A stretch of DNA of 64,000 nucleotides from Tubulanus polymorphus (Eukaryota > Animalia > Nemertea): NCBI RefSeq assembly GCF_964204645.1, contig NC_134030.1, positions 12,855,947 to 12,919,946 of the forward strand, in the 5' to 3' direction. Below, one piece after another: positions 1,276-44,122 of this stretch. Position 1 is the first letter of the stretch. The number at the start of each line of letters is the position of its first letter. The notes under the pieces were generated by a model that did not search any database, was not told where the DNA came from, and saw only the letters and a list, made by a program, of their open reading frames with translations. The position numbers and the translations under genes were made by a program.

Positions 1276-2690
1276 ATGGAAATAATTGAAAGTACCCGAG
1301 GTGGCCAGGAGTTGTGTTACAGTGGTTACATGTATACAAAGCAATACACCAAAAAAGAAAGTATTCGCTGGGTGTGTGAAAAAGAAATGATTAATGACGA
1401 GTAAAGAAATCACTGGACCTAGAGAAACCGCAGAACATAGTCATTGTAGAGATATGACTGAAATTGAAGTAACTAAAGCAAGATTTCAAACGAAGAAACG
1501 AGCTGAAAATACGAGAGAAATTCCAATTCAAATACATTCAGAAATAATTTCAAGACTTAACAACCCAGATGTACAAAGCCGATTACCTCACGCTGATACA
1601 TGCAAGAAAGTAATGCAAAGAGTTCGACGCAAGAAATATCAAAAAGATCCTGCAACCCATGATGAGCTGTTCATTACAGATACATGGTCTCTAACCCGAG
1701 AGGATGGAGAAGAGTTCCTGATGTACGATAACGCGAGCACAACATCAAGAATCATGATTTTGGCAACAGACATATGTTTGAAAAAACACTGTGAACCTGA
1801 TACGTGGTTCATGGACGGAAATTTCCAGATGGCACCAACTTTGTTCGAACAGTTGTATGTAATCCATGTCCCTCTGGCTAATTCTGCTATTTCAACCGTT
1901 TATGCATTCCTTCAAAGGAAAACTCAGGAAACTTATGAAGAATTTCTCACCGTATTATGTGAAAAGTGCGATGACAAGGGACTATTTCTCTCGCCGAAAA
2001 CTGTTGTGATAGATTTTGAGTTGGCAGTTCTCAATGCAACAAAATCTGTGTTTAGTGATATTGAAATAAGAGGATGCTTCTATCATTTATCCCAGTGTAT
2101 ATATCGTAAGATTCAAAACCTTGGACTTGCTACTATGTACAGGGACGATAAAGATTTTCAGTTATTCTGTGGATAGTTAAATGGACTGGCCTTCTTGACT
2201 GTGGATGATGTTGAATCCGGATACAATCATATACGCGAGACTGCTCCAGAAGAGGCAGCTGAGCTTGTTGATTACTTCGGCAGTAACTTTGTTTCAACGT
2301 ACCGTAAAATCCGTGCTCCAGGTGGACTGTTCCGTTTAAAGCGTGTTCCCCCACAGTATCCTCCAAAGACCTGGAACATGCATACTGTTACCATAAATTC
2401 TGAGGACAGAACAAACAAGTTGTCAGAGGCTTTGAACAATAAATTCCGTATATTTGTCGGAACAAAACATCCCTCTATCTGGCGTGCTATCGAATGCTTG
2501 CAGCAGGAAAATTGCGTTGTTGAAACTCTTCTGGCACAAATGGAAGCTGGGAATCCACCGAAAAAAACGTGTCAAACGAAATTACGTTCAGCTACAAAAT
2601 CGGCTGAAAAACCTCTGTGAGCAACATCGCGATGGTAAATCAAGTATAGTTCACTTTTTGCGTCGTGTTGGACGCAACCTGCGAAATTAG
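1276..2690 (+). pseudogene. FLYWCH-MULE DDE transposase pseudogene
   Basis: MEIIESTRGGQELCYSGYMYTK..IRWVC (FLYWCH-like), WFMDGNF, VVIDFE, GCFYHLSQ (CxxH), RTNKLSEALN, HPSIW; frameshift ~1390, TAG at 2174-2176, frameshift ~2570. Confidence 0.9.
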
Positions 2691-3081
2691 CGGACAAATG
2701 AATAATGAAAACTGTGCTGAAGATTGTGCTTTCTTGTATTATTGTGAATATGTTGCTGCAATATTGTAAATATCTTGTAAATATTGGTTCTTGTACATAT
2801 GCAACTTAATAAAAACATTTATAAGTGAAGTGAATTTAATTTATTGTTTTTCAATCAAAGTTAGTACTATACCATACAACCATATCAACACTTAGTACAA
2901 TACCATACATTAAACAATCTTAACCCATAGACTGAGTCCTATGAGCAGGTAATTAGTTATATCAGGAAGACTAATTGTCTTGGGTTGGTGATATCAAAGA
3001 GGACTAATTGTCAGAAGACCAAGTGGAAAAGACTAAATGTCCGGGAGACTAAATGTCAGAAGACTAAATGGGTGAATTCCC

Positions 3082-6000
3082 TCTGACACATACCATAGTA
3101 TAAAAGAATAAATGAATTTATGACTTTCCTTTGTAGTATAGTTTTGTCTGACGCCATTGGTTTAATATGTTTGATACTGTGCTGGCTTTTCGTTCCCAGT
3201 TCAGCTTAGCTATGTCATCTTGTCCAAAATACATGCCGTATATTTTTATATGTTTGTTCGACCATTTAAGGTTCTAAGGACTGTCAGTTCTATTTTTGGA
3301 GGCACCTATCCTTAAACATTCCGTTTTTTGGTGGTTCACTTTAGCACCGGAAGCTTTTTCGAAATCAGATAAAACATTCCTCAATTGATTTGATGCTGGT
3401 TAAAGTTAAGGTATTGTCATCAGCAAACTGTTTCATTTTACAAATACTGTCATCCGGTAACTTAATTCCTTTAATCCTCAGCGTTACGTCTGATTTTTTT
3501 ATTTGATAAAGTTTCAGCGATGATGACGTATAGCAACGCGCTCATCGGGCATCCCTGTCTAACTCCCCGTTCGAGGGAAAAGGGGGCTGTTAGGAATGAA
3601 TGTAGGTAAAAATCCCCCCGGTAAATATCCCCCCGGTAAAATTCCCACAAGGTAAAAATCCCCCCAAGTAAAAATCCCCCCGGTAAAAATCCCCCCGGTA
3701 AAAATCCCCCCTAGGTAAAAATCCCCCCTGGTAAAAATCCCCCCATATCCACTTTTCTATAAAACTAGAGTAGGAAAAATTAACTTTTTACAACATTATT
3801 TAGGAATACATAAGTACATTAGATATTTTATTAAACCAAACTTACCAAGGGATTAGAACAGCCATTTCTATTGTTCAATAATTTCAAATGCCTTAAATTA
3901 TCTTAGGGGTAATCACTCCGGTGCCCATAAAATCAAAGATGTTAATAACTGTAAACTAGATAATTCCGCGACTAGATAATTCTTAAGTAATAATTATTCA
4001 TTTTCAACAGTGACCACTCCTAATTAGCCACTTTAGTTTAAATGACCAATTTCAATCAACTGACTCGTACCCTTAGAATAAGTATTTTGTCTCTACAGTA
4101 ATTATTCTTAAATTATCTTAGGGGCAATCACTCCAGTGCCCAAAAAATCAAAGAAGTTAATAACTGTAAATCAAATGGGTTGGCTCCGTGACTAAATAAC
4201 TCTTAAGTAATATTTATCCTTTTTCAACAGTGGCCACTCTTTAATTAGCAAGTAGGCTAGTTTAAATGACCGAATTCAATCAACTGACTCGTACCCCTAG
4301 AATAAGTATTTTGTCTCTACACTTATTATTCTTTATTAAACGTTTGGTAACCGTATTTAATGGATGGAATTACTATACTAGAGTTAAATAAAGCAATAAA
4401 GTGCAATAAAATTTCGAATCTATATTTTTTTAAACATAATAGCTGTTGAAAATTTTAGTGAAATCAATTATAGGGGGATTTTTACCACGGGGGATTTTTA
4501 CCTAGGGGGGATTTTTACCGGGGGGATATTTACCGGGGGATTTTTACCGGGGGGATTTTAACTGGGGGGATTTTTACCTGTTACTGTTAGGAATCCATTA
4601 CTTATAATTTGCGATTTAGGGTCAATATAGCACATTTTAATGTATTTGATCATATTTTCACCGATTCCGAATGCTTCAAGGGATTTAAACATAAAGGACC
4701 AGTCGACCCGATCAAAGGCCTTCATCTGGTCGATGGCTATTAAAAATGCCTCAATATTTTCATCTTCTGTGTATTGAATTATATCTCGAATTATATGGCA
4801 ATTATCATGGATCCGCCTGCCTTTTACGTTGCATGTTTGACCAGGGTCAATTATATCCGTCATTACTTTGATTAACCTGTTTGTTAGAGTTTAAGTTATT
4901 ATTTTATAATCATTACATAGTAATGTGATTGGTCTCCAGTTTTCTAGGCGCGCTTTTTCGTTCTTTTTGTGGATTAGCGCGATGACGCCCATCTTCATAG
5001 AATCTGGAACCGTATTTTGGTTTATACATTCACACACTACTTGATGAAAGTCACTTTGTAGGATATTCCAGAGTTTCCTATAAAAGTTAATTGATATTCC
5101 GTCAAAACCAGGCGACTTATCTAATTTAAACGATTTTAGAGAGTCCGTTAGTTCTTTAAGCGTAATAAATAACATCAATCATTCCTGGGTTTTGAACTTG
5201 AGGTAGGTTTTCTAAAAAAAAGTCTGAAGTGGTCTATTGGTTCTTTGTTCTACAATTCTTTATAGAACTTAACTTTGATATCCATTATCTCACTTTGATT
5301 AGTTTTAAGTTTATTTTTTTCATTATACAGCGCATTTACATGGTTAATCTTTCCTTTTCTCTAAGTTGGCGAAGAATTTCGATGTTTTTTCTCCTTCCTC
5401 TCTCCACTCAATTTTGGATCGTATTATTTTCCCTTTTGTTTTATTGTCATCAATTTGTTTAATTATGGTTTCAATATTCTTCAATCTATTATGATCGTAG
5501 TTCTGACCCTTACTTGCCCGACTCTCTAAAATATATAATTCGTTTTCGAGTTTACGCTTTAGTTCGTTCCTAGATCTAGAAGTGTCTCATGCAAATTTAA
5601 TAGTTTTAGATTTAATAAGCTTTTTACCATCATCCCACCATTCGAGTATATTATCATAAACTCCTCTGTGCCTTTGCCACTTTTTCCAAGTGTCCGTAAT
5701 CATGTCACCATAATTTTCATTATTAAGCAAATCATTGTTCAAATGCCAGAACCCCTTGCCACGTTGAGGTTGGTTTGTGTGTAATGTCATTGACACTAAT
5801 TTGTGGTCTGAGTGTATCGAGTTAAGGTGTTCTATTGTTTCTACATCATTTGTGGCATATTGAGAAACGTAAAATCTATCAATTCGTGTTCTGGTTATCG
5901 TATTGTTGACCTTTGTTATTCTAGTAAACCCTTGTTTCAGGGGATTTAGTGACCTGAATGGATCTTCCAATCAATACAAATCGCACAATTGTCCGATCTG

Positions 6001-10147: not shown

Positions 10148-10727
10148 CTACAATACAATATAAAAGTTAGTTAGAATTATCAAATGTGAGATTAGATGCA
10201 ATCACACTAGATATATTACCAGTCCATTTAAGTGTAGAAGTTTGAACGTACATGTATCACTCTAATTAATCTTTAACCAGAAAGAGGATCTCCGATGATT
10301 AGGAAAAAGTAACGTCCGAGACATTTCCTTGAGCTAGTAGTTTATTCCACGTTCCGACTATATTCTAATAGTCATCTTCAGAAATACAGTGTTCACCCCA
10401 AATGAGAACACTTATGAATAGTTACTGATACGACTGGGATTACTTTATTCTTTTTTTTGTATATAGATGTATTTATTAGAAAATAAGAGACGGGGCCATG
10501 TGTAAAATCCAGTGGAATAATGCACTGATGAAGGCAGATATCCATATATTGTGATGCAGTTCCTCATTTCGATATGATCTGAAAAGCCGCACAGGGAGAA
10601 TGGATGACATACGTATTTATTGATTGACTGGGTGACTGCGCGATAACGAGGTATACTGGGAGACTGGCCGACATGTCACCGAGTTGCCAAATCAACCAGT
10701 CACCCAGTAGTATTAAGGATCACTTAC

Positions 10728-10838
10728 CGCATTCAAAGCAGCTTCCTTTTTCGCGTCTTCAATTGCTTTCATCTCTTCATACCGAGATTGGGCCTCTTTG
10801 AGCTGCCTTACCATCGTCTCATCGATTTGTCTAAATAA
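10728..10838 (-). CDS. PDE9A: PDE9 exon 16 (LFRQIDETMVRQLKEAQSRYEEMKAIEDAKKEAALNA)
   Basis: CAG/GTAAGT, 111 nt; matches the PDE9 C-terminal helix (RYEE). Confidence 0.9.
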
Positions 10839-10930: not shown

Positions 10931-11059
10931 CTTGGCAACAGTTTCAAACATAGGAATGAGCACAAATTTTATGAAACCAATTTGAGCCGTTGGTTTAGTG
11001 ACTTTCTCCCTGTCCATAAATGGGGCAACTGGTAATCCTTCTGATTTTTCTCTGTCCGA
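10931..11059 (-). CDS. PDE9A: PDE9 exon 15 ([43 protein letters not shown])
   Basis: CAG/GT, 129 nt; nearly identical to PDE9A, includes the invariant Gln and clamp Phe (AQIGF). Confidence 0.97.
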
Positions 11060-12000: not shown

Positions 12001-12245
12001 AGACAACATGAAATCTAAATGCCCCTACCCGCAGACGCAGGCATGAAAATAACCAGTATCAACTGTGGGCAAGAATTGGCTTAAAGGTTAAGGAGCCTAA
12101 GTTCCAGGCCTCATGTTAAAGACCCACCCACGTTGATAGGTTTCTGTGGGAGTAAGAGAATTTCAATCATAAAACCAATTGAACCGAAGTACCGAAATAC
12201 ACTGCGGAAACTTTGAATTCATTCTTTGCAAATGAATATAAATAC

Positions 12246-12350
12246 CTGGTTAAAGTATTCCTCTAGTAAACAATCGACCCACGGTTCAGATACAGACATA
12301 GGTCGTGTTTCGTTTGAAATGTCACAGCATTTTATGAGTACCATTTTCAA
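12246..12350 (-). CDS. PDE9A: PDE9 exon 14 ([35 protein letters not shown])
   Basis: CAG/GTATT, 105 nt; KCCDISN metal ligand motif and PDE9-type [10 protein letters not shown]. Confidence 0.97.
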
Positions 12351-14263
12351 CTGAAGATAATTACAAGAAGATAATTTGAGATAATAAGCAGACAATTGAC
12401 AATAAATCATAAACAAAACAACATTGTTAATATTAAGGCTATAATATGAATAGGTCGAAGTACGTAGATAGAAGTAGGGAGATTCGAATGCAAGAAAGAA
12501 TGTTGGTAATGTAATGAAATGTTAGATACGTAGGAACTGACAGAATCTATCATATCGTGATATGATTTAGGATATCTCATTTCTCATATCATTTCATTCA
12601 TCCACGCCAGCTATTCCTTTAAATTACAAAATCCATCAGGCTCAAACACAGGAGCAGTTATTGGTGGGGTTATTGGACAAAGTGATGGAGACCAGGGAAC
12701 CTGCGATTGATTTAGTAGGGAGTCAAGATATAAAGTCAGAAAGTCAGACACACGTTTTATAGTGTGGATTTCCTTGTATTTAGTGAAAAGAAATATTCCC
12801 CAAGGTAAAAATCCCAACCGAATAAATTCCCCAAGTTGGAGTTAACAACAATGTATCAACATCTTTATAATGAACGACTTAGATTTCACAATTGTATTAA
12901 CTCTAGATGACAATTATTCCTGCGATTACATGTGAGGGAAAAATCTTCAAAAATCTGCAGCAATATGTACATAACTTTTCAAGTTTTTTTTTTATTTCGG
13001 CAAAAGAAATTGGAGCCAAACCATCTTGACAGGGGTTATTATCATCAGCACATTCAGGTTTGATACGTATCATCAATGATATGATAAGAAACTGAATTAA
13101 AGAGAATCTTTACCAGGGGGATTTCAACTGTTACCTGAAATGAAAACATTAAGGGATCAGTTATCAAACTGACTCCAACCTCCCACGTACAGAATAACCG
13201 GACATCCAAATGGGGTAACATCCGTCCATCTTGGGACGATGTAACTAGCTCCTGTGATGTCTAGCATGAACTACCTTTGCAAATCGAATTCACGCATGAT
13301 ACGTATGATATAGTTTTGAATCCTTAATATCATACCTTTTGAGTAACCATTCTGATGACTCATGATATCATTTGCTTATATAGGTATGATATCATTGGTC
13401 GTTTTACTGGTGGAAATCAGCGGGGTTTTAATGGTATTACAACGAGAGTCAAACCTGTCTTCAAGTTATTGAATGATAAAAAATTGCGGCTTTGTGAAGA
13501 GGGAAACGAAAATGACATCTCACTTGAAATTTGATTTGGCATGCAACGATTTACAACATAATGCAATACAACATGAGTCTACTATAAACACAGTGTACTA
13601 AGCACATAATCTTGATATGCAGAAATGTTCCACAAATAAATAGGATGAAAAACGAATTTGATAAATAGTATACGAGAAATATAGAAAGTTTACTACCAAC
13701 CTTGTTTAGTCTAAAACGATGTACGAGTAAGAATACGGATTAAAATTACATTATTACACGAATCAGTGCACATAGTTAGTTGATAAAAATAACAGCAATG
13801 CCGTATTGTGAAATCAGTTTCTTGTGAATTACAGTGAGTGGATATGCCGTATTGTGAAACCAGTTTCTTGTGAATTACAGTGAGTGGATATGAAAGCAGA
13901 TATTTTAGAATGTGATTTTATGTGATTTTACGAGTGGGATTTTAATCGGGGATATTGACTGGAGGGACTTCGACCTGCGTTCACAATTTTTCGCTGAACT
14001 GCTTAGATTTCTTAATTTTTCCACCGGTTTCTTTTTTCCTAGCGTGAGCTGATATTATACGTTGAATCTAGTCCTTCGAGGAGTGAATTGAACAGTAAAA
14101 CGTGAGGTGTAATAGAGTGACTAGATTATTCCCATAAAGCGGCAGAGAATACCAATATTTTGATTCCCCATAAAACCTCAGGTTAGGAATAAAATATACA
14201 CTGTAACTAGAACTAAGTACTAACCATTGCGATGATAGATTATAACTAAAGTTCATATTTTAC

Positions 14264-14377
14264 CGAGTTCAGGTGATCTTGTTTTGAAAAGTCATATGAT
14301 TCATACTTAGACTTGAAGGTTTCCAATATTTCACTATGCCGAGCCATATCGGTCGCTAATATAAGCATAATGATACC
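14264..14377 (-). CDS. PDE9A: PDE9 exon 13b, alternative ([38 protein letters not shown])
   Basis: CAG/GTAAA, 114 nt, phase 0-0; [10 protein letters not shown] motif. Confidence 0.92.
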
Positions 14378-15488
14378 CTGTGTATAATAAATGGGTTTGA
14401 AATAAGATATATGTTGATATATAGTTATCTATGAGTTTTGCTAAAACCTGAGACATAAGCTGAACAGTAGCAGATTAGGTATTCGTTTACTTGGTTGAAG
14501 TAAGTAAGTGCAACGATTTCGATTTTTGGTAAGATAGCAGATTGCGACCATCTGATGCTCCAGACAACCACTCACTCATTCAGCCGTTTGCCCTATTTTT
14601 GTTTAGGTCATAATAAATGTGCAAGTTTGAGGCCGCATTATGACAGCTTCCTTGGTTTCACTAGATATTCCATAAAGGACTTTAAAATTGGCAAATATCA
14701 ACGCATTTCATTGGCCGCGGACGGGATAGTGTTTGCACTTGAGGAAACCAAGGTACGAACAACGTAAAAGCAATGTGCGTAGTAAAAACTAGCGTTAATT
14801 ATGATTGTTTTCGAGCCTTCTATCCGTACGCCTTTCGTCATCCTCTTGGACCGGATTTTGTCTCCGGGTTTTGTTACATGTAAGTTACTGCCCATTCTTT
14901 GTGCTGGTTTCCGTCCAGGAATTCATCGCTGATTTCAGTCCGGGAATATATTATTCGCTGGTTTCAGTCCTGGAATGGCCATAATTCCTTACATTTTGCT
15001 TTGTTCCAAAATTTCTGGTCATAGTTCCAGAGCTAAGACTTTCATCGCTGGTTTCAGTCCAAGGTGGAATATTCGATGGTCTCAGTCCAGGAATAGTCCA
15101 GAATGTACTTAGCGGATACGAGATTTGAAATAGAAATCCATATGTCGTACAAAATAATTATCATAGGATTAAAAATTTTCCGATATCAAACATTTAAACA
15201 ACGGGAACTGTTTCGAATATGCAGTTAAGCAACGTTGAGGCTAGGTATTCGGAGTGTGGACGCCAAAACTCGTTAACCGAAATAATGGGGGACTTATTAT
15301 ACATCTAGAATAAGAATTATTCATTACTCCAAAAACAACGTCAGTCATTAAGAGCACAAAAAGAAATTACTAAAACTATCAATTCATCGATCCGCTTATT
15401 CGGAGAGAAGGCTATAGAAATTCCCTGAATATATTTTTTTAGTGACTATGCTGTTGACCTGCAGATGAGTGGCTAAGTGTATTAGGAA

Positions 15489-16029
15489 GGGGCATACTCA
15501 TTACTCCGAAGTCCCATTACTACGAAGTCCCGATACTCCAGAATCGCGTTTAAAGGGTGCACATAATCTCAATCGACATTGACGAACATTATATGGTAGG
15601 GGTTTCAGATGGGGAGCCGTTTAGGTTTGAGCAACCCGTTTTGAAACATGTCACCTGGCCACGGAATTTCCAAAAAGGAGAATTACCGTTAAGTCGTCGT
15701 ACCCTGTATCACTATAATTATAGGTCTTCCCCCGGCATTATGTTGTTGTAAAAATCAATAAATCATTTTCAGAGATGTTATTACAGCACATTTAATTAAA
15801 CATTTATTATAATTTTTTTCTATTTATAATGTCTAGCTTTCCTAATAAAATCTAGGTTCAGTCCTGCTTTATTGACCTTCAAAAATTAATTGTTTGGAAT
15901 ATTGGGACCTCGGAGTAATGCGATTTCGGGGTAATGGGACCAGCTCTGACTACAATTTAATTTCGGAGTAATGGGTCTTCGGAAATGGGATTTCGGAGTA
16001 TTGGGAATTTGGAGTGTTGAGACGACCCC
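15489..16029. mobile_element. Foldback MITE with subterminal CATTACTCCGAAGTCC repeats
   Basis: GGGG...CCCC ends, inverted repeat arrays, 8-bp TSD ATTAGGAA (15481-15488 and 16030-16037). Confidence 0.8.
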
Positions 16030-18101
16030 ATTAGGAATATGCGGACGTCCCTTCTCTCCAAATAACTAGTTTCGCCAAGTCTTTATTTTGATTAAACGTC
16101 ATTTCAACAATGCGCTACGTCAAAACGTTGAAACATTAGGTGCCAAGACCGCACGGATACAAGTCATATTGTTCGGGTTCTCTGCTTACGGCAGAAAACA
16201 CCACGACTCATTGCCTTCGCTAAAAGCAGAATATCGTTATATCGTAGAATATCGTTAGGTTATACTTGGGTGTATATTTCTGTGGTAAAAACAATAAGTC
16301 ATATGACCTTGATACTTCATCGAGATGATCTGAAGTTCCGAAAGCCGTGTGAACACGTTAGGGACCGTACAAAAATAAGATAATACTCCACAGCCATAAA
16401 AGCAATATTTTCGTAGTATCAAATACTTGTACAGTGGGAATACTTCAGATTTTTGCCCTTTAGTCCCAATCATCGCGATTATTTTCTGAATAGAATTGAT
16501 TTGGATTGAATTTTTGAATAGCGGTTAATTTCTGAATTGATTTAGATTGATCTTTTAATTACTGCACGGATTAAATTTACTTTTTTCGTGAACATCTATT
16601 TGTCAATTGGATATGGGCACAATATATTTATCTTTGATTGCCATTCAGGCAATTTGTGTAACAGTGGTATGTTGGTGATGGAGGTAATTTTTGTTGTTGT
16701 TGTAGTTGTTGTAACAAAATTTATTTAGGGGTATTTACCAACACAGCACGTAATTTCATTGACTCGCTCTACCTGTGATGCATGAGTGTTCCAATTCATT
16801 TGATAAGTAAAAACTTAGTGCGTTTCACTTGTATTTGAAAGGGTGATTTGCCGTTCCTTAAATGCCGTTCCCGTCATTACGCCATTAGTTGTTATGATGT
16901 TCGGAGGATTTACTTCTACGTTTTGACAATACACTTTCAAGTTGTACACAAAATCAGTCTATCGTGTGATAGAAACATTTTGACGGGAATGGTCGCCCAT
17001 ACATATTCAAACGGATCATCACCAACGTACTATACGTACTCAAATTGGTCCTAGGAAAAATAGATCGCCTATGAACTTCGTGAACCACGTTGTACCCTTC
17101 CGGGTAAAAAGGGAATATAGGAGCCTGTGATATCTAAATACCGAGTTAAGTCACATTGATCTGTATTAGGCCAGCCGTAGGCTAAGCCTATTACTATACA
17201 AATGGAGGGAATTTAAATAAAATGGTTTCCAGAGCAAAGGCTCTTTGTCCGTGGAACTGAGCATATATTCATACAAATCATTCAGTAAAGCATTATCCAT
17301 TCTCCAAACTGTACGTAGCTGAATTTTGAAAGAGGGCCTCGTTAAAATTTATATGAGCTTTTTCGCGAATATCTGATCCCAAAAATATGTGTTTTGAAAA
17401 GCCAATCAGAAAGCAAGGCTCCTCTATGATTGGCTTAGCCGCAGAAATATGCAGGTGTTCACGTGAACCCGCGGTATCGTCTACCGTTTTACTTCCTGGT
17501 TTTATTCTTAGATCTAAAATTGTATTTCAAGATCGATTTCTGTGAAAGCTTTTGTTAATTTGGTTTTTTGGAGGAATATTTTTGTTGCCACTACAGAAAA
17601 TATCATTGACCATTTTCGGAAAAAATAGCTTTTTCTTAAATCGGATAGATGACCTTGATATGCTAATTAGCCATGTGCTCAAACTACAAATTCAATCAAA
17701 TTTTATTCTGCAAAGAATATCAAATCCAATTCAACTTTGTTCTATTGAGCAAATTTCAGAAAATTCAATTTTATTCCGCATTAAAATCAATAAGACCAAG
17801 GAAAAAGATTTATCTGAGGTATTTGTTCCTGCCAGATCCAGTCGCTGTCTGTGCTACTTTTGTATTCTACGATTGTAAGTGTAAATTATTAGGTATTGAC
17901 TCTCAGCTGGGAGTGTATTTTGACAAATTTAACCCACAGAATGCATCATCATTTGCCATTTTATGAAAAGCTGACAGGCTGGCCATAGTGCCCCTTGGGG
18001 CTCTTGTTGTATCATGCATGTGTGCGAGAGGTAGAACAAAGACATTACATAGATTACAAATAACAATTAACTCTTATCATCCAATACAACGATTAGCGTA
18101 C

Positions 18102-18218
18102 CGGATCGGTGTGATCCTTCTTCACAAAGTCAAAACCTTCGTCTATTTTCTGCTTGAAACATTCCATTATGTCAGCATGGCGAGCCATATCCGTAGCGAG
18201 GATCAGGGTCGTTATTCC
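18102..18218 (-). CDS. PDE9A: PDE9 exon 13a, alternative ([39 protein letters not shown])
   Basis: TAG/GTACGC, 117 nt, phase 0-0, open; second [10 protein letters not shown] copy. Confidence 0.9.
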
Positions 18219-21004
18219 CTAGCATCAAAGCAACATTTGACATGTATTTAGATACGATTGACAAACAGGTTTCGTGTCGGGAAGTGGCTGCTGATAGAAT
18301 TATCTGTGCATCTTACTAACGTCCTTCAATAAGAATCAATTAATTGGAATTAAGTTCATACATTTGGCCCAGATCAAAAACCGATAATAGTAGCTCTTTG
18401 CTGAAGTCGACATCGTATGTTAAAAATCATAAAAAGAAAGATGGATAGAATCTTGACTTAGGAAAAATGTCCTAAGTTTAAACCAGAAAGAAACTTTCCA
18501 CGATTGGTTTCAGTTAACATTCCTAGTGCTTCTGGCGCAGCGAACCTTTCCTGGAAGAGATACACACTCACCACTTTATGAATGGCACAACCAGCCCATA
18601 CCTGCTCTAACATTTTATATACTCTATGTATATAGTATTTAGATATTGTTGTTGAACGAACAAATAATCTAGACAAGAGGAGTACGCATAGTCCCACGTG
18701 TTGCAATACCGTAAGGCATACGTAAGGCATAATTGTTTGGCTGATGTTGTCGGGATTGCCTGCACCAGTCATTTTTAATGTTTATATGAATGAAGACGCT
18801 ACCGACCCTGTTGTGTCCGGCAGCAAGGGGAGGTGAAGCCGCTACTCTTCCCGATGGCAAATCTCCCACAGTGACCTACGTCAATTCCGTTGTGGAATGG
18901 TCATGACCCGAATGATCATTCGCGCTCAATACGTCATCGCGGTCAGCTCGCGGTCGTGTTCACCGCCCCAGTGGTCTTCAATAACAATTTTTGCAGAGTT
19001 CATATTGGTAAGGGTTATTGCAAAATTTATGGACGAGACTCAAAGTGAAAAACAAACCAGGTGTTTCCCTAATGTCAGTATGGTGGATTTGCCATCACGT
19101 TGTTAGTTAACGTGCACAATAGATAAAATGACCTCGTATATAGGTAGCGCTACTGACCGGTCTAAGCAGCCTTTTGAAAAATCTTTTAAAAATCAAGTGG
19201 CAGGATGTGTGATATTGGTGACGTATACTGAAAAGCAGATATATACAACATGAGAACTACCCTAACGGCGAACCCCGTACAATCCCATGCATTGCCCCGG
19301 CTCAGTGACAAGTCGATGGCACGTATGGAATTCTTGGCCATTAACTCTGAAATCAAATTTCCAAAAATTGGGTGGAATATCGGAGTCTTGTAAACTCTCT
19401 AAAATGTGAATGAATACGGGACGAGTTTGTTTGATCAAACAATGTCAAAAATAGGTCTCATATATTTCATTCTAGAATGATGAGGACAAGTCTCGAATGC
19501 CCCAGACCTGAAATTCACCGCCATATGTGAAGTTGCAGGGTTTGTGGTAAATGCGTAGGGAATGGAGGTATTCAATAATTTTTCGGAAAACTGCGCAAGT
19601 CTAAAATAAGTCCAAAAGATAATAGCGCACATCCTCCTTGTCACAAACATGATAACCAGGGGATAGAAAACAATCTGCATTATAGGATTGGCTTCATGAG
19701 TCAAAAACAATACAGCTCGCCCTCCTCGCTTCGAATCGAAAATCAATAGCTGTAGATTGCGGAGAGGAGGCAAGGTCCAGCCTGTTTCGCATATGTGTAT
19801 TTCATATATTGGATGACTTACATATGTCAAAAACAATAGGGCTACTCCAACCTCAAACCCTAACCTGAATACAAAGTTATACGAAAATCAGTTTTACGGA
19901 AAACTGCACCAGTAACAGCGCACACCCTACTCATGTCACAAAGTTGATTACCAACAGGAACAATGTGCAAAGATCATTTTACACACATAGCTGTGGAACG
20001 CATCTTGGATTACCTACATACGCAAAATCCATTTCCTTTTTGAAACCCACTTTTAAAAAACTATTGAAAAATCTGTACAACTTGTACAATGTAGAACCGG
20101 GACAAGGTCGAAAGTGTAAATTTTGCACACATATATGGTCTTGGTGGCCTCCACCTACGTCAGTCAAAAGTAATAAGGCTGATCTTCCATTTGGCCCTAA
20201 CAAATAATAAGAAAGTTGACTGTAGTGTGGGACCCCGGTGCAACATGCCCATTTCACACAACATGGTTTAGGCATCCATCTTCGCTTACCTCCGTGAGTA
20301 AAAGAACAATGGAGCTCACCCTCCTCTTATCGAATCGGAAACCCAAGTAATAAGAAAATTGGCCCGAAACTGTTGACTGTGGAGAGAGGACAACGTCCTA
20401 AATGCCTAATCATGCTAAATATACGCATTTCACATTTTGAATGTTTTACATAATCTAAAAACAATAGGACTTCCCGTCTTACCTGAATACAAACTCATAA
20501 GCAATAATGTTAAAATGTAGACTGCAGGGTGGGAACAACATATTCTCCCCCGTTCAATCGCCTAGCAAGATGGGCTGACCAGCACAGGCGAACACAATCT
20601 CCTTTACAGCTAAGATAATCAGTCGCTTGCCAGTCTAGGCTGATTAGAAGTTTGTTTGAATGAATCAGAACCGAAATATCCAATGAAGAAAATTGTGCAA
20701 TTGTGACCGCCGATCACAAAACAATATTTGCACTTCGATTTCCGATTTCAAAATCAAACCCCCTGTTTCGCACCCGGGAGGTGTGGTGGGCTTGTACGGG
20801 AGACCAAATCAAAATAAATCAAACGAAATTTACTAATTAAATGAATGACAGGGGCAATCCCTATCTCAGGAGGAACAAAAGACCGAGGGGATACAAGAAT
20901 ACACGATTTAATAAGCATCTATTGTTTCTACATTCAAGTTAAGGCTAATCCTGTAGATTTTACTTACATCCCCAATTTAAAAAGTAGCTTTTAAAGTTTC
21001 TTAC

Positions 21005-21161
21005 CGATCTTATTCGTTTGAACGTATCGTTGTCAACATTCGAAAATATATTGCATTCCGGATTACTTAGGATCTGAAAAGCTACTGCACAATGGTGATT
21101 TTCCAGTGGTGATATGTCATTATATCGAATAGCCAATTCCGTTCGGGCATTTATTTGATAC
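21005..21161 (-). CDS. PDE9A: PDE9 exon 12 ([52 protein letters not shown])
   Basis: CAG/GTAAG, 157 nt; SPLENHH motif. Confidence 0.97.
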
Positions 21162-21280
21162 CTGAAAATAAAACAGCAAAACCCTGAATTCAAGTATTAA
21201 GATACATATGCCCTCTCCAACAAGGGCTTATAAGACCTAGCATGACGTTTTGCCATAAGAGACAGCTGGGAGGTCATCTT

Positions 21281-23654: not shown

Positions 23655-23842
23655 GTGTTGTTGTACCCAGGATGATCTAGATCGTGGCAAACTGCAGCCG
23701 TTATGAGAATTCCAAGATCCTCGCGTGACATTTTATCCCAGAGTTCGCAAAGGTGTATGATACCGTACATCATTTGAGAAACGCAAAAACAATGTCTAAA
23801 ATTGTGGAATGGGTTGTTCCGATAGTTTTCCTGCACACAAAG
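23655..23842 (-). CDS. PDE9A: PDE9 exon 11 ([26 protein letters not shown]...[12 protein letters not shown])
   Basis: CAG/GTAAGT, 188 nt; class I PDE signature [10 protein letters not shown] and PDE9-type [10 protein letters not shown]. Confidence 0.98.
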
Positions 23843-24002: not shown

Positions 24003-24089
24003 CAGCCATCTTTTCAAAGTAATCGGGTTAATGTTAAATTCGTTGACCAAGTCAAGCTCGTGGAACATGTGTTCTAAAAGGCTAAGCAT
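24003..24089 (-). CDS. PDE9A: PDE9 exon 10b, alternative ([29 protein letters not shown])
   Basis: CAG/GTAAGT, 87 nt, phase 0-0; close to vertebrate MLSCLEHMYHDLGLV..NPVTLRRWL. Confidence 0.95.
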
Positions 24090-24322: not shown

Positions 24323-24409
24323 CAAAAAATTCCTTAATTTTTCAGGATCGATATTCAATTGGTAAACGATATCCAATTCGTAGAACATATGTTCTATTAG
24401 CAATAAAAG
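24323..24409 (-). CDS. PDE9A: PDE9 exon 10a, alternative (LLLLIEHMFYELDIVYQLNIDPEKLRNFL)
   Basis: TTTTCAG/GTAAGA, 87 nt, phase 0-0, open; ungapped paralogue of 10b. Confidence 0.85.

Positions 24410-43907: not shown

Positions 43908-44122
<215 letters not shown>

What the first reader, a model, noticed from the sequence alone, without database searches (positions are those of the whole stretch)
14264..18218. Duplicated catalytic exon pair 13a/13b in PDE9 (ATDMARH exon), candidate mutually exclusive splicing
Seen: two intact phase 0-0 exons 3.7 kb apart encode the same structural segment: [39 protein letters not shown] and [48 protein letters not shown] is conserved while most of its codons differ synonymously (CTG/CTT, ATC/ATA, CTC/TTA, GCT/GCG, ACG/ACC, CGC/CGG), which indicates purifying selection on both copies. 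Known: this segment lines the metal side of the class I PDE active site, and vertebrate PDE9A splice variants differ at the N-terminus with a constant catalytic domain. Inference: one gene yields enzymes with different catalytic domains. Including both exons would duplicate core helices.
Basis: partly seen in the sequence, partly recalled or inferred. Interest (0 to 1): 0.8.

Follow-up and report, generated by a model that had tools for sequence, protein, structure and literature searches.

The report
Alternative exon pair in PDE9
This invertebrate's gene for the cGMP-degrading enzyme PDE9 holds two old, intact copies of one catalytic-domain exon; oysters splice the matching pair as either-or alternatives, so this is a real but familiar kind of splicing switch, and I found no paper that describes it.

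Summary
On the minus strand, window 18102-18218 (13a, 39 codons) and 14264-14377 (13b, 38 codons) are both open, both AG/GT-flanked and both phase 0-0. Both match human PDE9A residues 355-390. Every other catalytic exon found in the gene is single, except a second pair, 10a/10b.

The two copies are 61% identical in protein and saturated at synonymous sites. Each copy is closer to a counterpart in other animals than to its partner.

An upstream copy followed by a downstream copy also occurs on contigs of four other organisms, including oyster. Two relatives carry only the A-type.

In oysters, RefSeq isoforms X1 and X2 differ only by this exon swap. De novo transcript contigs exist for A-only and for B-only mRNAs. 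M. gigas RefSeq also has models that carry both exons.

Mutually exclusive use here is therefore inferred, not shown.

The zinc ligands lie in other exons, and the ATDMARH motif is identical in both copies. The copies differ mainly in the following helix and loop.

Verdict: a new member of a known kind (alternative exons from tandem duplication). Databases model it, but I found no paper on it. Earlier scan notes list many similar pairs in this genome.

The parts
21005..21161 (-). PDE9 exon 12 (YQINAR...RIRS), single copy; donor gtaaga; ends in phase 0
18102..18218 (-). Exon 13a, upstream copy, A-type: 39 codons, phase 0-0, donor gtacgc, GC 46%
14378..18101 (-). Intron of 3724 nt between the two copies; no similarity between the exon flanks and no convincing competing stem
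14264..14377 (-). Exon 13b, downstream copy, B-type: 38 codons, phase 0-0, donor gtaaaa, GC 37%
12246..12350 (-). PDE9 exon 14 ([14 protein letters not shown]...), single copy; carries the Asp that matches the human zinc ligand Asp402
23655..23842 (-). PDE9 exon 11 with the HNFRH and HDLDH metal-binding motifs, single copy
10931..11059 (-). PDE9 exon 15 (SDREK...FETVAK), single copy
10713..10838 (-). Last coding exon, ending in stop TAA at 10713-10715

Best explanation
One PDE9 gene (cGMP phosphodiesterase, minus strand) carries an old tandem duplicate of the exon that encodes the end of one core helix, the Thr-Asp kink of the ATDMARH motif, the next 15-residue helix and the loop after it. During splicing, exon 12 is joined to 13a or to 13b, and that exon is joined to exon 14. 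The result is two enzymes with the same metal ligands and the same ATDMARH motif, but with a different second helix and surface loop. Shown here: the duplication, the intact splice signals and reading phases, long-term purifying selection on each copy, the same upstream/downstream arrangement in other animals, and either-or usage of the matching pair in oyster transcripts. Inferred: that this species splices the pair the same way, that co-inclusion is minor, and that the swap tunes stability, regulation or partner binding rather than the chemistry. How exclusivity is enforced is unknown.
For: Anatomy and phases. Only this Pfam segment is doubled in an otherwise single exon series. Both copies hit human PDE9A 355-390 best.

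Selection between the copies: pS 0.78, pN 0.28. Selection on each copy against its counterparts elsewhere: 13a pS 0.76-0.91 and pN 0.20-0.26; 13b against L003 and L009 pS at least 0.86 and pN 0.13-0.18.

The same tandem order is seen in L003, L004, L008 (oyster) and L009/L010.

Exon tree: all upstream copies fall with A-type exons and all downstream copies with B-type exons. Independent duplication in both lineage groups is rejected jointly (delta lnL 25.5, p-AU 0.029).

Oyster RefSeq X1 (P0269) and X2 (P0268) are identical apart from the swap. B-only full-length ORFs sit on about 2-2.7 kb intron-less contigs from 7 runs. A-only transcript ORFs are P0294, P0305 and P0308.

AlphaFold models the B-only oyster isoform confidently through the exon (pLDDT 83-96). 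In the A+B isoform the second copy drops to pLDDT 43-51.
Against: Both exons are multiples of 3. Co-inclusion or double skipping would therefore keep the frame and escape nonsense-mediated decay.

Thirteen fetched M. gigas RefSeq models (11 of them among isoforms X1-X12) and a Tegillarca model carry both copies.

The intron of 3.7 kb rules out steric exclusion. I found no convincing competing RNA stems here or in relatives.

Two relatives manage with the A-type alone (L006 and L007), so the B copy is dispensable in some lineages.

Single-lineage AU tests did not reject a recent duplication (p 0.116, 0.095, 0.224). The groups were also chosen after I had seen the tree.

The AlphaFold contrast is partly built in, because the alignment has gaps at the second copy.
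Confidence: 0.62

Rival explanations
1. 13a is the default exon and 13b is a minor or conditional exon. It would be used in few cells or stages, or inserted after 13a as an in-frame cassette (A+B), so the main product is a single enzyme.
For: Most mollusc mRNAs and models use the A-type alone. L006 and L007 have no B copy. Thirteen fetched M. gigas RefSeq models carry A+B. Double inclusion keeps the frame.
Against: B-only oyster transcripts were assembled independently in at least 7 runs. The A+B forms I saw occur only as genome annotation, with contig count 1. 13b is the more conserved copy: 30 of 38 residues match L009_b at saturated synonymous sites. It also has the better polypyrimidine tract. 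Annelid mRNAs use the B-type as their only exon. The second copy in A+B is modelled poorly.
Confidence: 0.2
2. One copy is a relic that is no longer spliced in this species. It stays open only by chance or through recent loss of use.
For: There is no expression evidence here. The B copy has been lost outright in some relatives. The 13a donor gtacgc and its short pyrimidine tract look weak.
Against: Both copies keep AG/GT, their phase and an open frame, although synonymous sites are saturated between them and against their counterparts. pN is only 0.13-0.26 against the closest counterparts. The invariant [10 protein letters not shown] stretch is intact in both.
Confidence: 0.08
3. Both exons are routinely included together, giving a PDE9 with a repeated helix-loop unit.
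For: The frame is preserved. A+B models exist in M. gigas and Tegillarca annotations.
Against: A-only and B-only transcripts both exist in oysters. Other taxa have single-exon PDE9s of either type. AlphaFold gives the second copy pLDDT 43-51 against 83-96 when it stands alone. The segment lies inside a compact helical catalytic fold.
Confidence: 0.03

Closest known systems
Oyster PDE9 isoforms in RefSeq (Crassostrea angulata / Magallana gigas X1 XP_052721257.1 and X2 XP_052721258.1; P0269, P0268)
   Same: The same gene family and the same exon are doubled. The A-type copy (39 residues) lies upstream and the 38-residue copy downstream (L008). The two isoforms are identical apart from the swap.
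   Different: The oyster downstream copy is much more diverged: 16 of 38 residues match 13b. The oyster intron is about 1.2 kb, against 3.7 kb here. These isoforms are database models and transcript assemblies; I found no paper that describes them.
Mutually exclusive exons from tandem exon duplication (criteria of PMC3228551; human tandem duplicated exon substitutions, PMC8373072 and PMC9741552)
   Same: The exons are adjacent, homologous, of similar length, in the same phase and with canonical splice sites. The pair is ancient and swaps a homologous protein segment.
   Different: Both exons are multiples of 3, so the frame does not enforce exclusivity. No selector or docking RNA structure was found. 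One-per-mRNA use has not been shown in this species.
Vertebrate PDE9A splice variants (own knowledge, not tested here)
   Same: One PDE9 gene gives several protein isoforms.
   Different: As far as I know, the vertebrate variants differ in N-terminal exons and keep one catalytic domain. The vertebrate exon found here was single (fragments). This pair lies inside the catalytic domain.
PKM exons 9/10 (PKM1/PKM2), an enzyme with a swapped internal exon (own knowledge)
   Same: An alternative homologous exon inside an enzyme core changes regulation rather than the catalytic residues.
   Different: It is a different fold and family. Functional differences are proven for PKM but are only guessed here.

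Membership tests
Class I cyclic-nucleotide phosphodiesterase, PDE9 subfamily | PDEase_I (PF00233) domain encoded in order along the gene | tested here: met
   Six ordered exon hits cover profile positions 1-230. Each copy of the doubled exon hits positions 106-133/136.
Class I cyclic-nucleotide phosphodiesterase, PDE9 subfamily | Metal-binding His/Asp motifs (HNxxH, HDxxH, and the Asp of CCDISN) | tested here: met
   HNFRH and HDLDH lie in exon 11 and CCDISNE in exon 14. The corresponding human ligands are listed in PMC7828511.
Class I cyclic-nucleotide phosphodiesterase, PDE9 subfamily | Closest solved relatives are PDE9A rather than other PDE families | tested here: met
   PDE9A hits score E 6e-8 (13a) and 7e-10 (13b). 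The next families score E at least 0.004. Conserved exons are about 85% identical to mollusc PDE9.
Class I cyclic-nucleotide phosphodiesterase, PDE9 subfamily | cGMP-specific, high-affinity hydrolysis | not testable with these tools
   This needs an enzyme assay of both isoforms.
Mutually exclusive exon cluster from tandem exon duplication | Neighbouring exons of one gene with sequence homology | tested here: met
   61% protein identity, E about 4e-11 within the window, and no exon between the two copies.
Mutually exclusive exon cluster from tandem exon duplication | Similar length, same reading phase, and canonical splice sites on each copy | tested here: met
   117 and 114 nt, both phase 0-0, both AG...GT.
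Mutually exclusive exon cluster from tandem exon duplication | Each copy maintained by selection | tested here: met
   pN 0.13-0.26 with pS 0.76 or more against the closest counterparts in other organisms.
Mutually exclusive exon cluster from tandem exon duplication | Exactly one copy per mature mRNA | tested here: inconclusive
Oyster counterpart: A-only and B-only transcripts exist, but A+B RefSeq models exist too.
Mutually exclusive exon cluster from tandem exon duplication | A mechanism that enforces exclusivity (frame shift with decay, steric hindrance, incompatible spliceosomes, or competing RNA stems) | tested here: not met
   Both exons are multiples of 3. The intron is 3724 nt. Both donors are GT-type. 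Only weak inverted repeats were found (22 nt at 77%, 19 nt at 79%), and none is shared with relatives. Regulation by splicing factors could not be tested.

The most novel reading that the evidence does not exclude
The A/B exon pair may be a switch older than the split of molluscs, annelids and this animal's lineage. Several spiralian lineages would have kept it and others resolved it to one copy: A only in gastropod-like and heterodont-like relatives, B only in annelid mRNAs. It may also be one case of a wider habit of diversifying PDE catalytic domains through alternative duplicated exons. In support of that, the homologous ATDM exon is also doubled in this genome's PDE4-like gene, two exons are doubled in a PDE5/6/11-like gene, and the PDE9 exon-10 pair is shared with amphioxus. 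The two PDE9 forms would then differ in a surface helix and loop that sets regulation or partner binding.
Probability: 0.45. Interest if true: 0.55.

Novelty: new member of a known kind. Interest (0 to 1): 0.4.

Why it matters
PDE9 is a drug target, and its known isoform diversity lies in the N-terminus. An old, conserved alternative exon inside the catalytic domain points to a helix-loop segment that evolution treats as a tuning site while the chemistry stays fixed. Oyster data already contain both transcript forms, so recombinant A and B enzymes could be compared directly. The parallel duplications in other PDE genes of this genome suggest a family-wide pattern that could be checked across invertebrate annotations. 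It does not reveal a new mechanism.

Tried and rejected

2. Joined gene model. Exons were searched singly by reference, and structure predictions used database oyster proteins, not the window's own protein.

I redid it from references.

4. Competing RNA structures. Inverted repeats in window 12200-21250 and in L003, L004, L008 and L009 gave only short, weak, unshared stems. I base no mechanism on them.

5. Whole-gene tandem duplication is rejected. Only one Pfam segment, plus exon 10, is doubled, and the DNA similarity ends at the exon borders.

6. Recent lineage-specific duplication. It was not rejected for single lineages (p-AU 0.116, 0.095, 0.224) and was rejected only jointly (p-AU 0.029), with 39 columns and groups chosen post hoc.

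7. P0074 is not on record for contig look-up. P0131 turned out to be a metatranscriptome cDNA and therefore has no introns.

8. Four literature searches found no description of alternative catalytic-domain exons in PDE9 or other PDEs. The library does not cover subscription journals.

9. Several representative hits are mammalian PDE9A, some of them human-like. I did not look up their contigs or use them in the tree.

10. The identities of the organisms behind L003, L004 and L009/L010 could not be established.
Full report
**What is in the sequence**

The gene lies on the minus strand. Read in gene orientation, window 18102-18218 is the upstream copy, 13a (117 nt). Window 14264-14377 is the downstream copy, 13b (114 nt). 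Each is preceded by AG and followed by GT, and each starts and ends in phase 0.

Exon 12 (21005-21161) ends in phase 0 with a strong donor (gtaaga). Exon 14 (12246-12350) begins in phase 0 after a good pyrimidine tract. The introns are 2786, 3724 and 1913 nt.

They are 61% identical with one single-residue indel. Searching either peptide against the window finds the other at E about 4e-11 and no third copy. The nucleotide similarity is confined to the exons (repeat family D3).

A Pfam PDEase_I scan of the whole assembly places one ordered series of catalytic exons in the window: profile positions 1-52, 53-104, 105-138 twice, 149-183 and 182-230. This is therefore an exon duplication inside one gene, not two genes.

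**What the segment is**

Both peptides find human PDE9A residues 355-390 as their best solved relatives. The E-values are 6e-8 and 7e-10, and other PDE families score far weaker.

According to PMC7828511, zinc in PDE9A is held by His256, His292, Asp293 and Asp402, and Met365 contacts the inhibitor IBMX. By the alignment, the doubled exon holds none of the four zinc ligands. Their counterparts sit in exon 11 (HNFRH, HDLDH) and exon 14 (CCDISNE). The exon does hold the Met of ATDMARH, and that whole motif is identical in the two copies.

Of 15 substitutions plus the indel, two substitutions lie before the motif and the rest lie after it.

I used AlphaFold on database oyster isoforms to locate the segment. 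It covers the last eight residues of one helix, a Thr-Asp break, a 15-residue helix, a loop of about 7-13 residues and the first turn of the next helix. 'Different catalytic domains' is therefore too strong. The swap exchanges a helix-loop unit next to the active site and leaves the motif itself unchanged.

**Are both copies kept by selection?**

Between the copies, synonymous sites are saturated (pS 0.78) while pN is 0.28. A two-sequence comparison cannot say which copy is constrained, so I looked for counterparts elsewhere.

A profile of the two exons searched against 1.84 billion representative proteins gave 341 hits at E 0.001 or better. They fall into two recognisable types:
- A-type: 39 residues, with an extra residue before the G/N-F-D motif and an ending like K-D/E-H-x-D-T/S. 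13a is of this type.
- B-type: 38 residues, with ..EIL.. and an ending like E-D-H-L-N-S. 13b is of this type.

Against A-type exons of five other organisms, 13a shows pS 0.76-0.91 and pN 0.20-0.26. Against the closest B-type exons, 13b shows pS 0.86 or more and pN 0.13-0.18, with 30 of 38 residues identical to L009_b. Both copies have therefore been under purifying selection over long spans of time.

**The pair in other genomes**

I fetched the contigs behind these hits. Four other organisms have an upstream copy followed on the same strand, 0.5-1.2 kb later, by a downstream 38-residue copy (in three of them the upstream copy is a 39-residue A-type):
- L003, from a JGI metagenome.
- L004, Logan SRR12008146.
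- L008, Logan SRR322879, whose exons equal oyster PDE9.
- L009/L010, ERZ23486763 and GCA_013332715.1. Here the upstream copy also has 38 residues and sits on a very long branch, so I left it out of the later tests.

Two relatives have the A-type only. In L006 the whole stretch from exon 12 through A and exon 14 to exon 15 fits in 2.3 kb. In L007 a 4.4-kb intron holds no intact B copy by tblastn.

In named proteins, gastropods, a chiton, mussels, heterodont clams and the flatworm Macrostomum use 39-residue A-type exons. Octopus uses a 38-residue exon that groups with the A-type in the tree. The annelids Owenia and Dimorphilus use B-type exons.

A maximum-likelihood tree of 39 exon peptides puts every upstream copy on the A side and every downstream copy on the B side. 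The central branch is weakly supported (UFboot 48, SH-aLRT 96). Forcing the window pair together costs 10 log-likelihood units (p-AU 0.116). Forcing separate duplications in both the window/L003/L009 group and the bivalve group is rejected (delta lnL 25.5, p-AU 0.029). Each constraint alone is not rejected (p 0.095, 0.224).

With only 39 columns, and with groups named after I had seen the tree, this is suggestive only. Together with the constant order, it favours one old duplication followed by losses.

**Is the pair used as alternatives?**

The best substitute is the oyster counterpart. RefSeq isoforms X1 (P0269, 553 aa) and X2 (P0268, 552 aa) of Crassostrea angulata / Magallana gigas are identical before and after the exon. 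X1 carries the A copy and X2 carries the B copy.

Independently assembled contigs of about 2-2.7 kb encode full-length uninterrupted ORFs, so they are cDNA-derived:
- B-only P0304 occurs in 7 runs, including ERR1758981, ERR1758954, SRR15851235, SRR3101507, SRR6058537 and SRR3101509.
- Further B-only forms are P0306, P0307 and P0282.
- A-only forms are P0294, P0305 and P0308.

Both single-exon forms therefore exist as RNA.

Strict exclusivity is less clear. Thirteen fetched M. gigas RefSeq models (P0154, P0270-P0277, P0281, P0319; 11 of them among X1-X12) and a Tegillarca model (P0152) carry A and B in tandem. Among the cluster members listed to me, these forms were seen only on the chromosome record (contig count 1). 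Only 15 members per cluster are listed, however.

AlphaFold models the B-only isoform with pLDDT 83-96 across the exon. In the A+B isoform it models the first copy at 80-89 and the second at 43-51. This fits the idea that one copy completes the fold. It is partly expected, though, because the alignment has gaps at the second copy.

**Mechanism of choice**

None of the simple enforcers applies:
- Both exons are multiples of three, so co-inclusion or double skipping stays in frame.
- The intron between them is 3.7 kb.
- Both donors are GT-type.
- Inverted repeats across the region are short and weak.
- No stem is shared with the relatives.

13a has the weaker signals (donor gtacgc and a short pyrimidine tract) and a higher GC content (46% against 37%). 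Regulation by splicing factors is the remaining option and cannot be tested here.

**Organism**

The conserved PDE9 exons are about 85% identical to several mollusc classes alike. That fits a lophotrochozoan outside those classes. Earlier notes of this scan call the genome a ribbon worm, Tubulanus polymorphus, and list many other old alternative exon pairs in it. I did not test that name.

**Comparison with what is known, and novelty**

The pair meets the sequence criteria used to predict mutually exclusive exons (PMC3228551). It resembles the ancient tandem duplicated exon substitutions described for human genes (PMC8373072, PMC9741552).

The PDE9 case itself is visible in RefSeq oyster isoforms. 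Four full-text searches found no paper on alternative catalytic-domain exons in PDE9 or any other PDE.

I file it as a new member of a known kind. My confidence that this species uses 13a and 13b as alternatives is about 0.6. The main rival, at about 0.2, is that 13a is the default and 13b a minor or cassette exon.

- Exons were searched one by one by reference. The joined step was left out.
- Mammalian, partly human-like PDE9A representatives returned were not followed to contigs or used in the tree.

Noticed in passing
window 24323-24409 and 24003-24089 (minus strand): The same PDE9 gene has a second tandem exon pair, 10a/10b. Each exon is 87 nt and phase 0-0, with a 233-nt intron between them. 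Amphioxus RefSeq isoforms X2 (P0206) and X3 (P0074) differ only in the homologous exon, with the same order (NIDP-type upstream, NINP-type downstream). P0151 carries both. The relative L007 has only the 10b-like exon.
   Followed up: partly
L001 (G000:C2:21894000-21902000), about 4959-5057 and 4392-4517, minus strand: This genome's PDE4/dunce-like gene has two tandem copies of the ATDMSKH exon, the segment homologous to 13a/13b. Both are AG/GT-flanked and open. They differ mainly in the stretch after KKV.
   Followed up: partly
L002 (G000:C2:1856500-1864500), 5330-5494 / 4946-5122 and 3217-3357 / 2470-2706, minus strand: A PDE5/6/11-like gene has two doubled catalytic exons: the HD-motif exon and a later exon. 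Tandem exon duplication therefore recurs in PDE genes of this genome.
   Followed up: no
P0152 (Tegillarca granosa) and 13 fetched M. gigas RefSeq models (P0154, P0270-P0277, P0281, P0319): Public gene models include both copies of the doubled PDE9 exon in tandem. These are either real co-inclusion or an annotation artefact of in-frame duplicated exons.
   Followed up: partly
window 4561-4890 (minus strand): An open frame with a reverse-transcriptase (RVT_1) match at E 5e-9, probably a retroelement fragment downstream of the PDE9 gene.
   Followed up: no
window 43909-44120: A perfect (TA)106 microsatellite. The stretch at about 41.2-43.2 kb also reads as repeated related open frames on the minus strand, but TRF at score 100 reported no array there.
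   Followed up: no
window 18102-18218 versus 14264-14377: The two copies differ in base composition. 13a is 46% GC, while 13b is 37%, the same as the surrounding intron.
   Followed up: no
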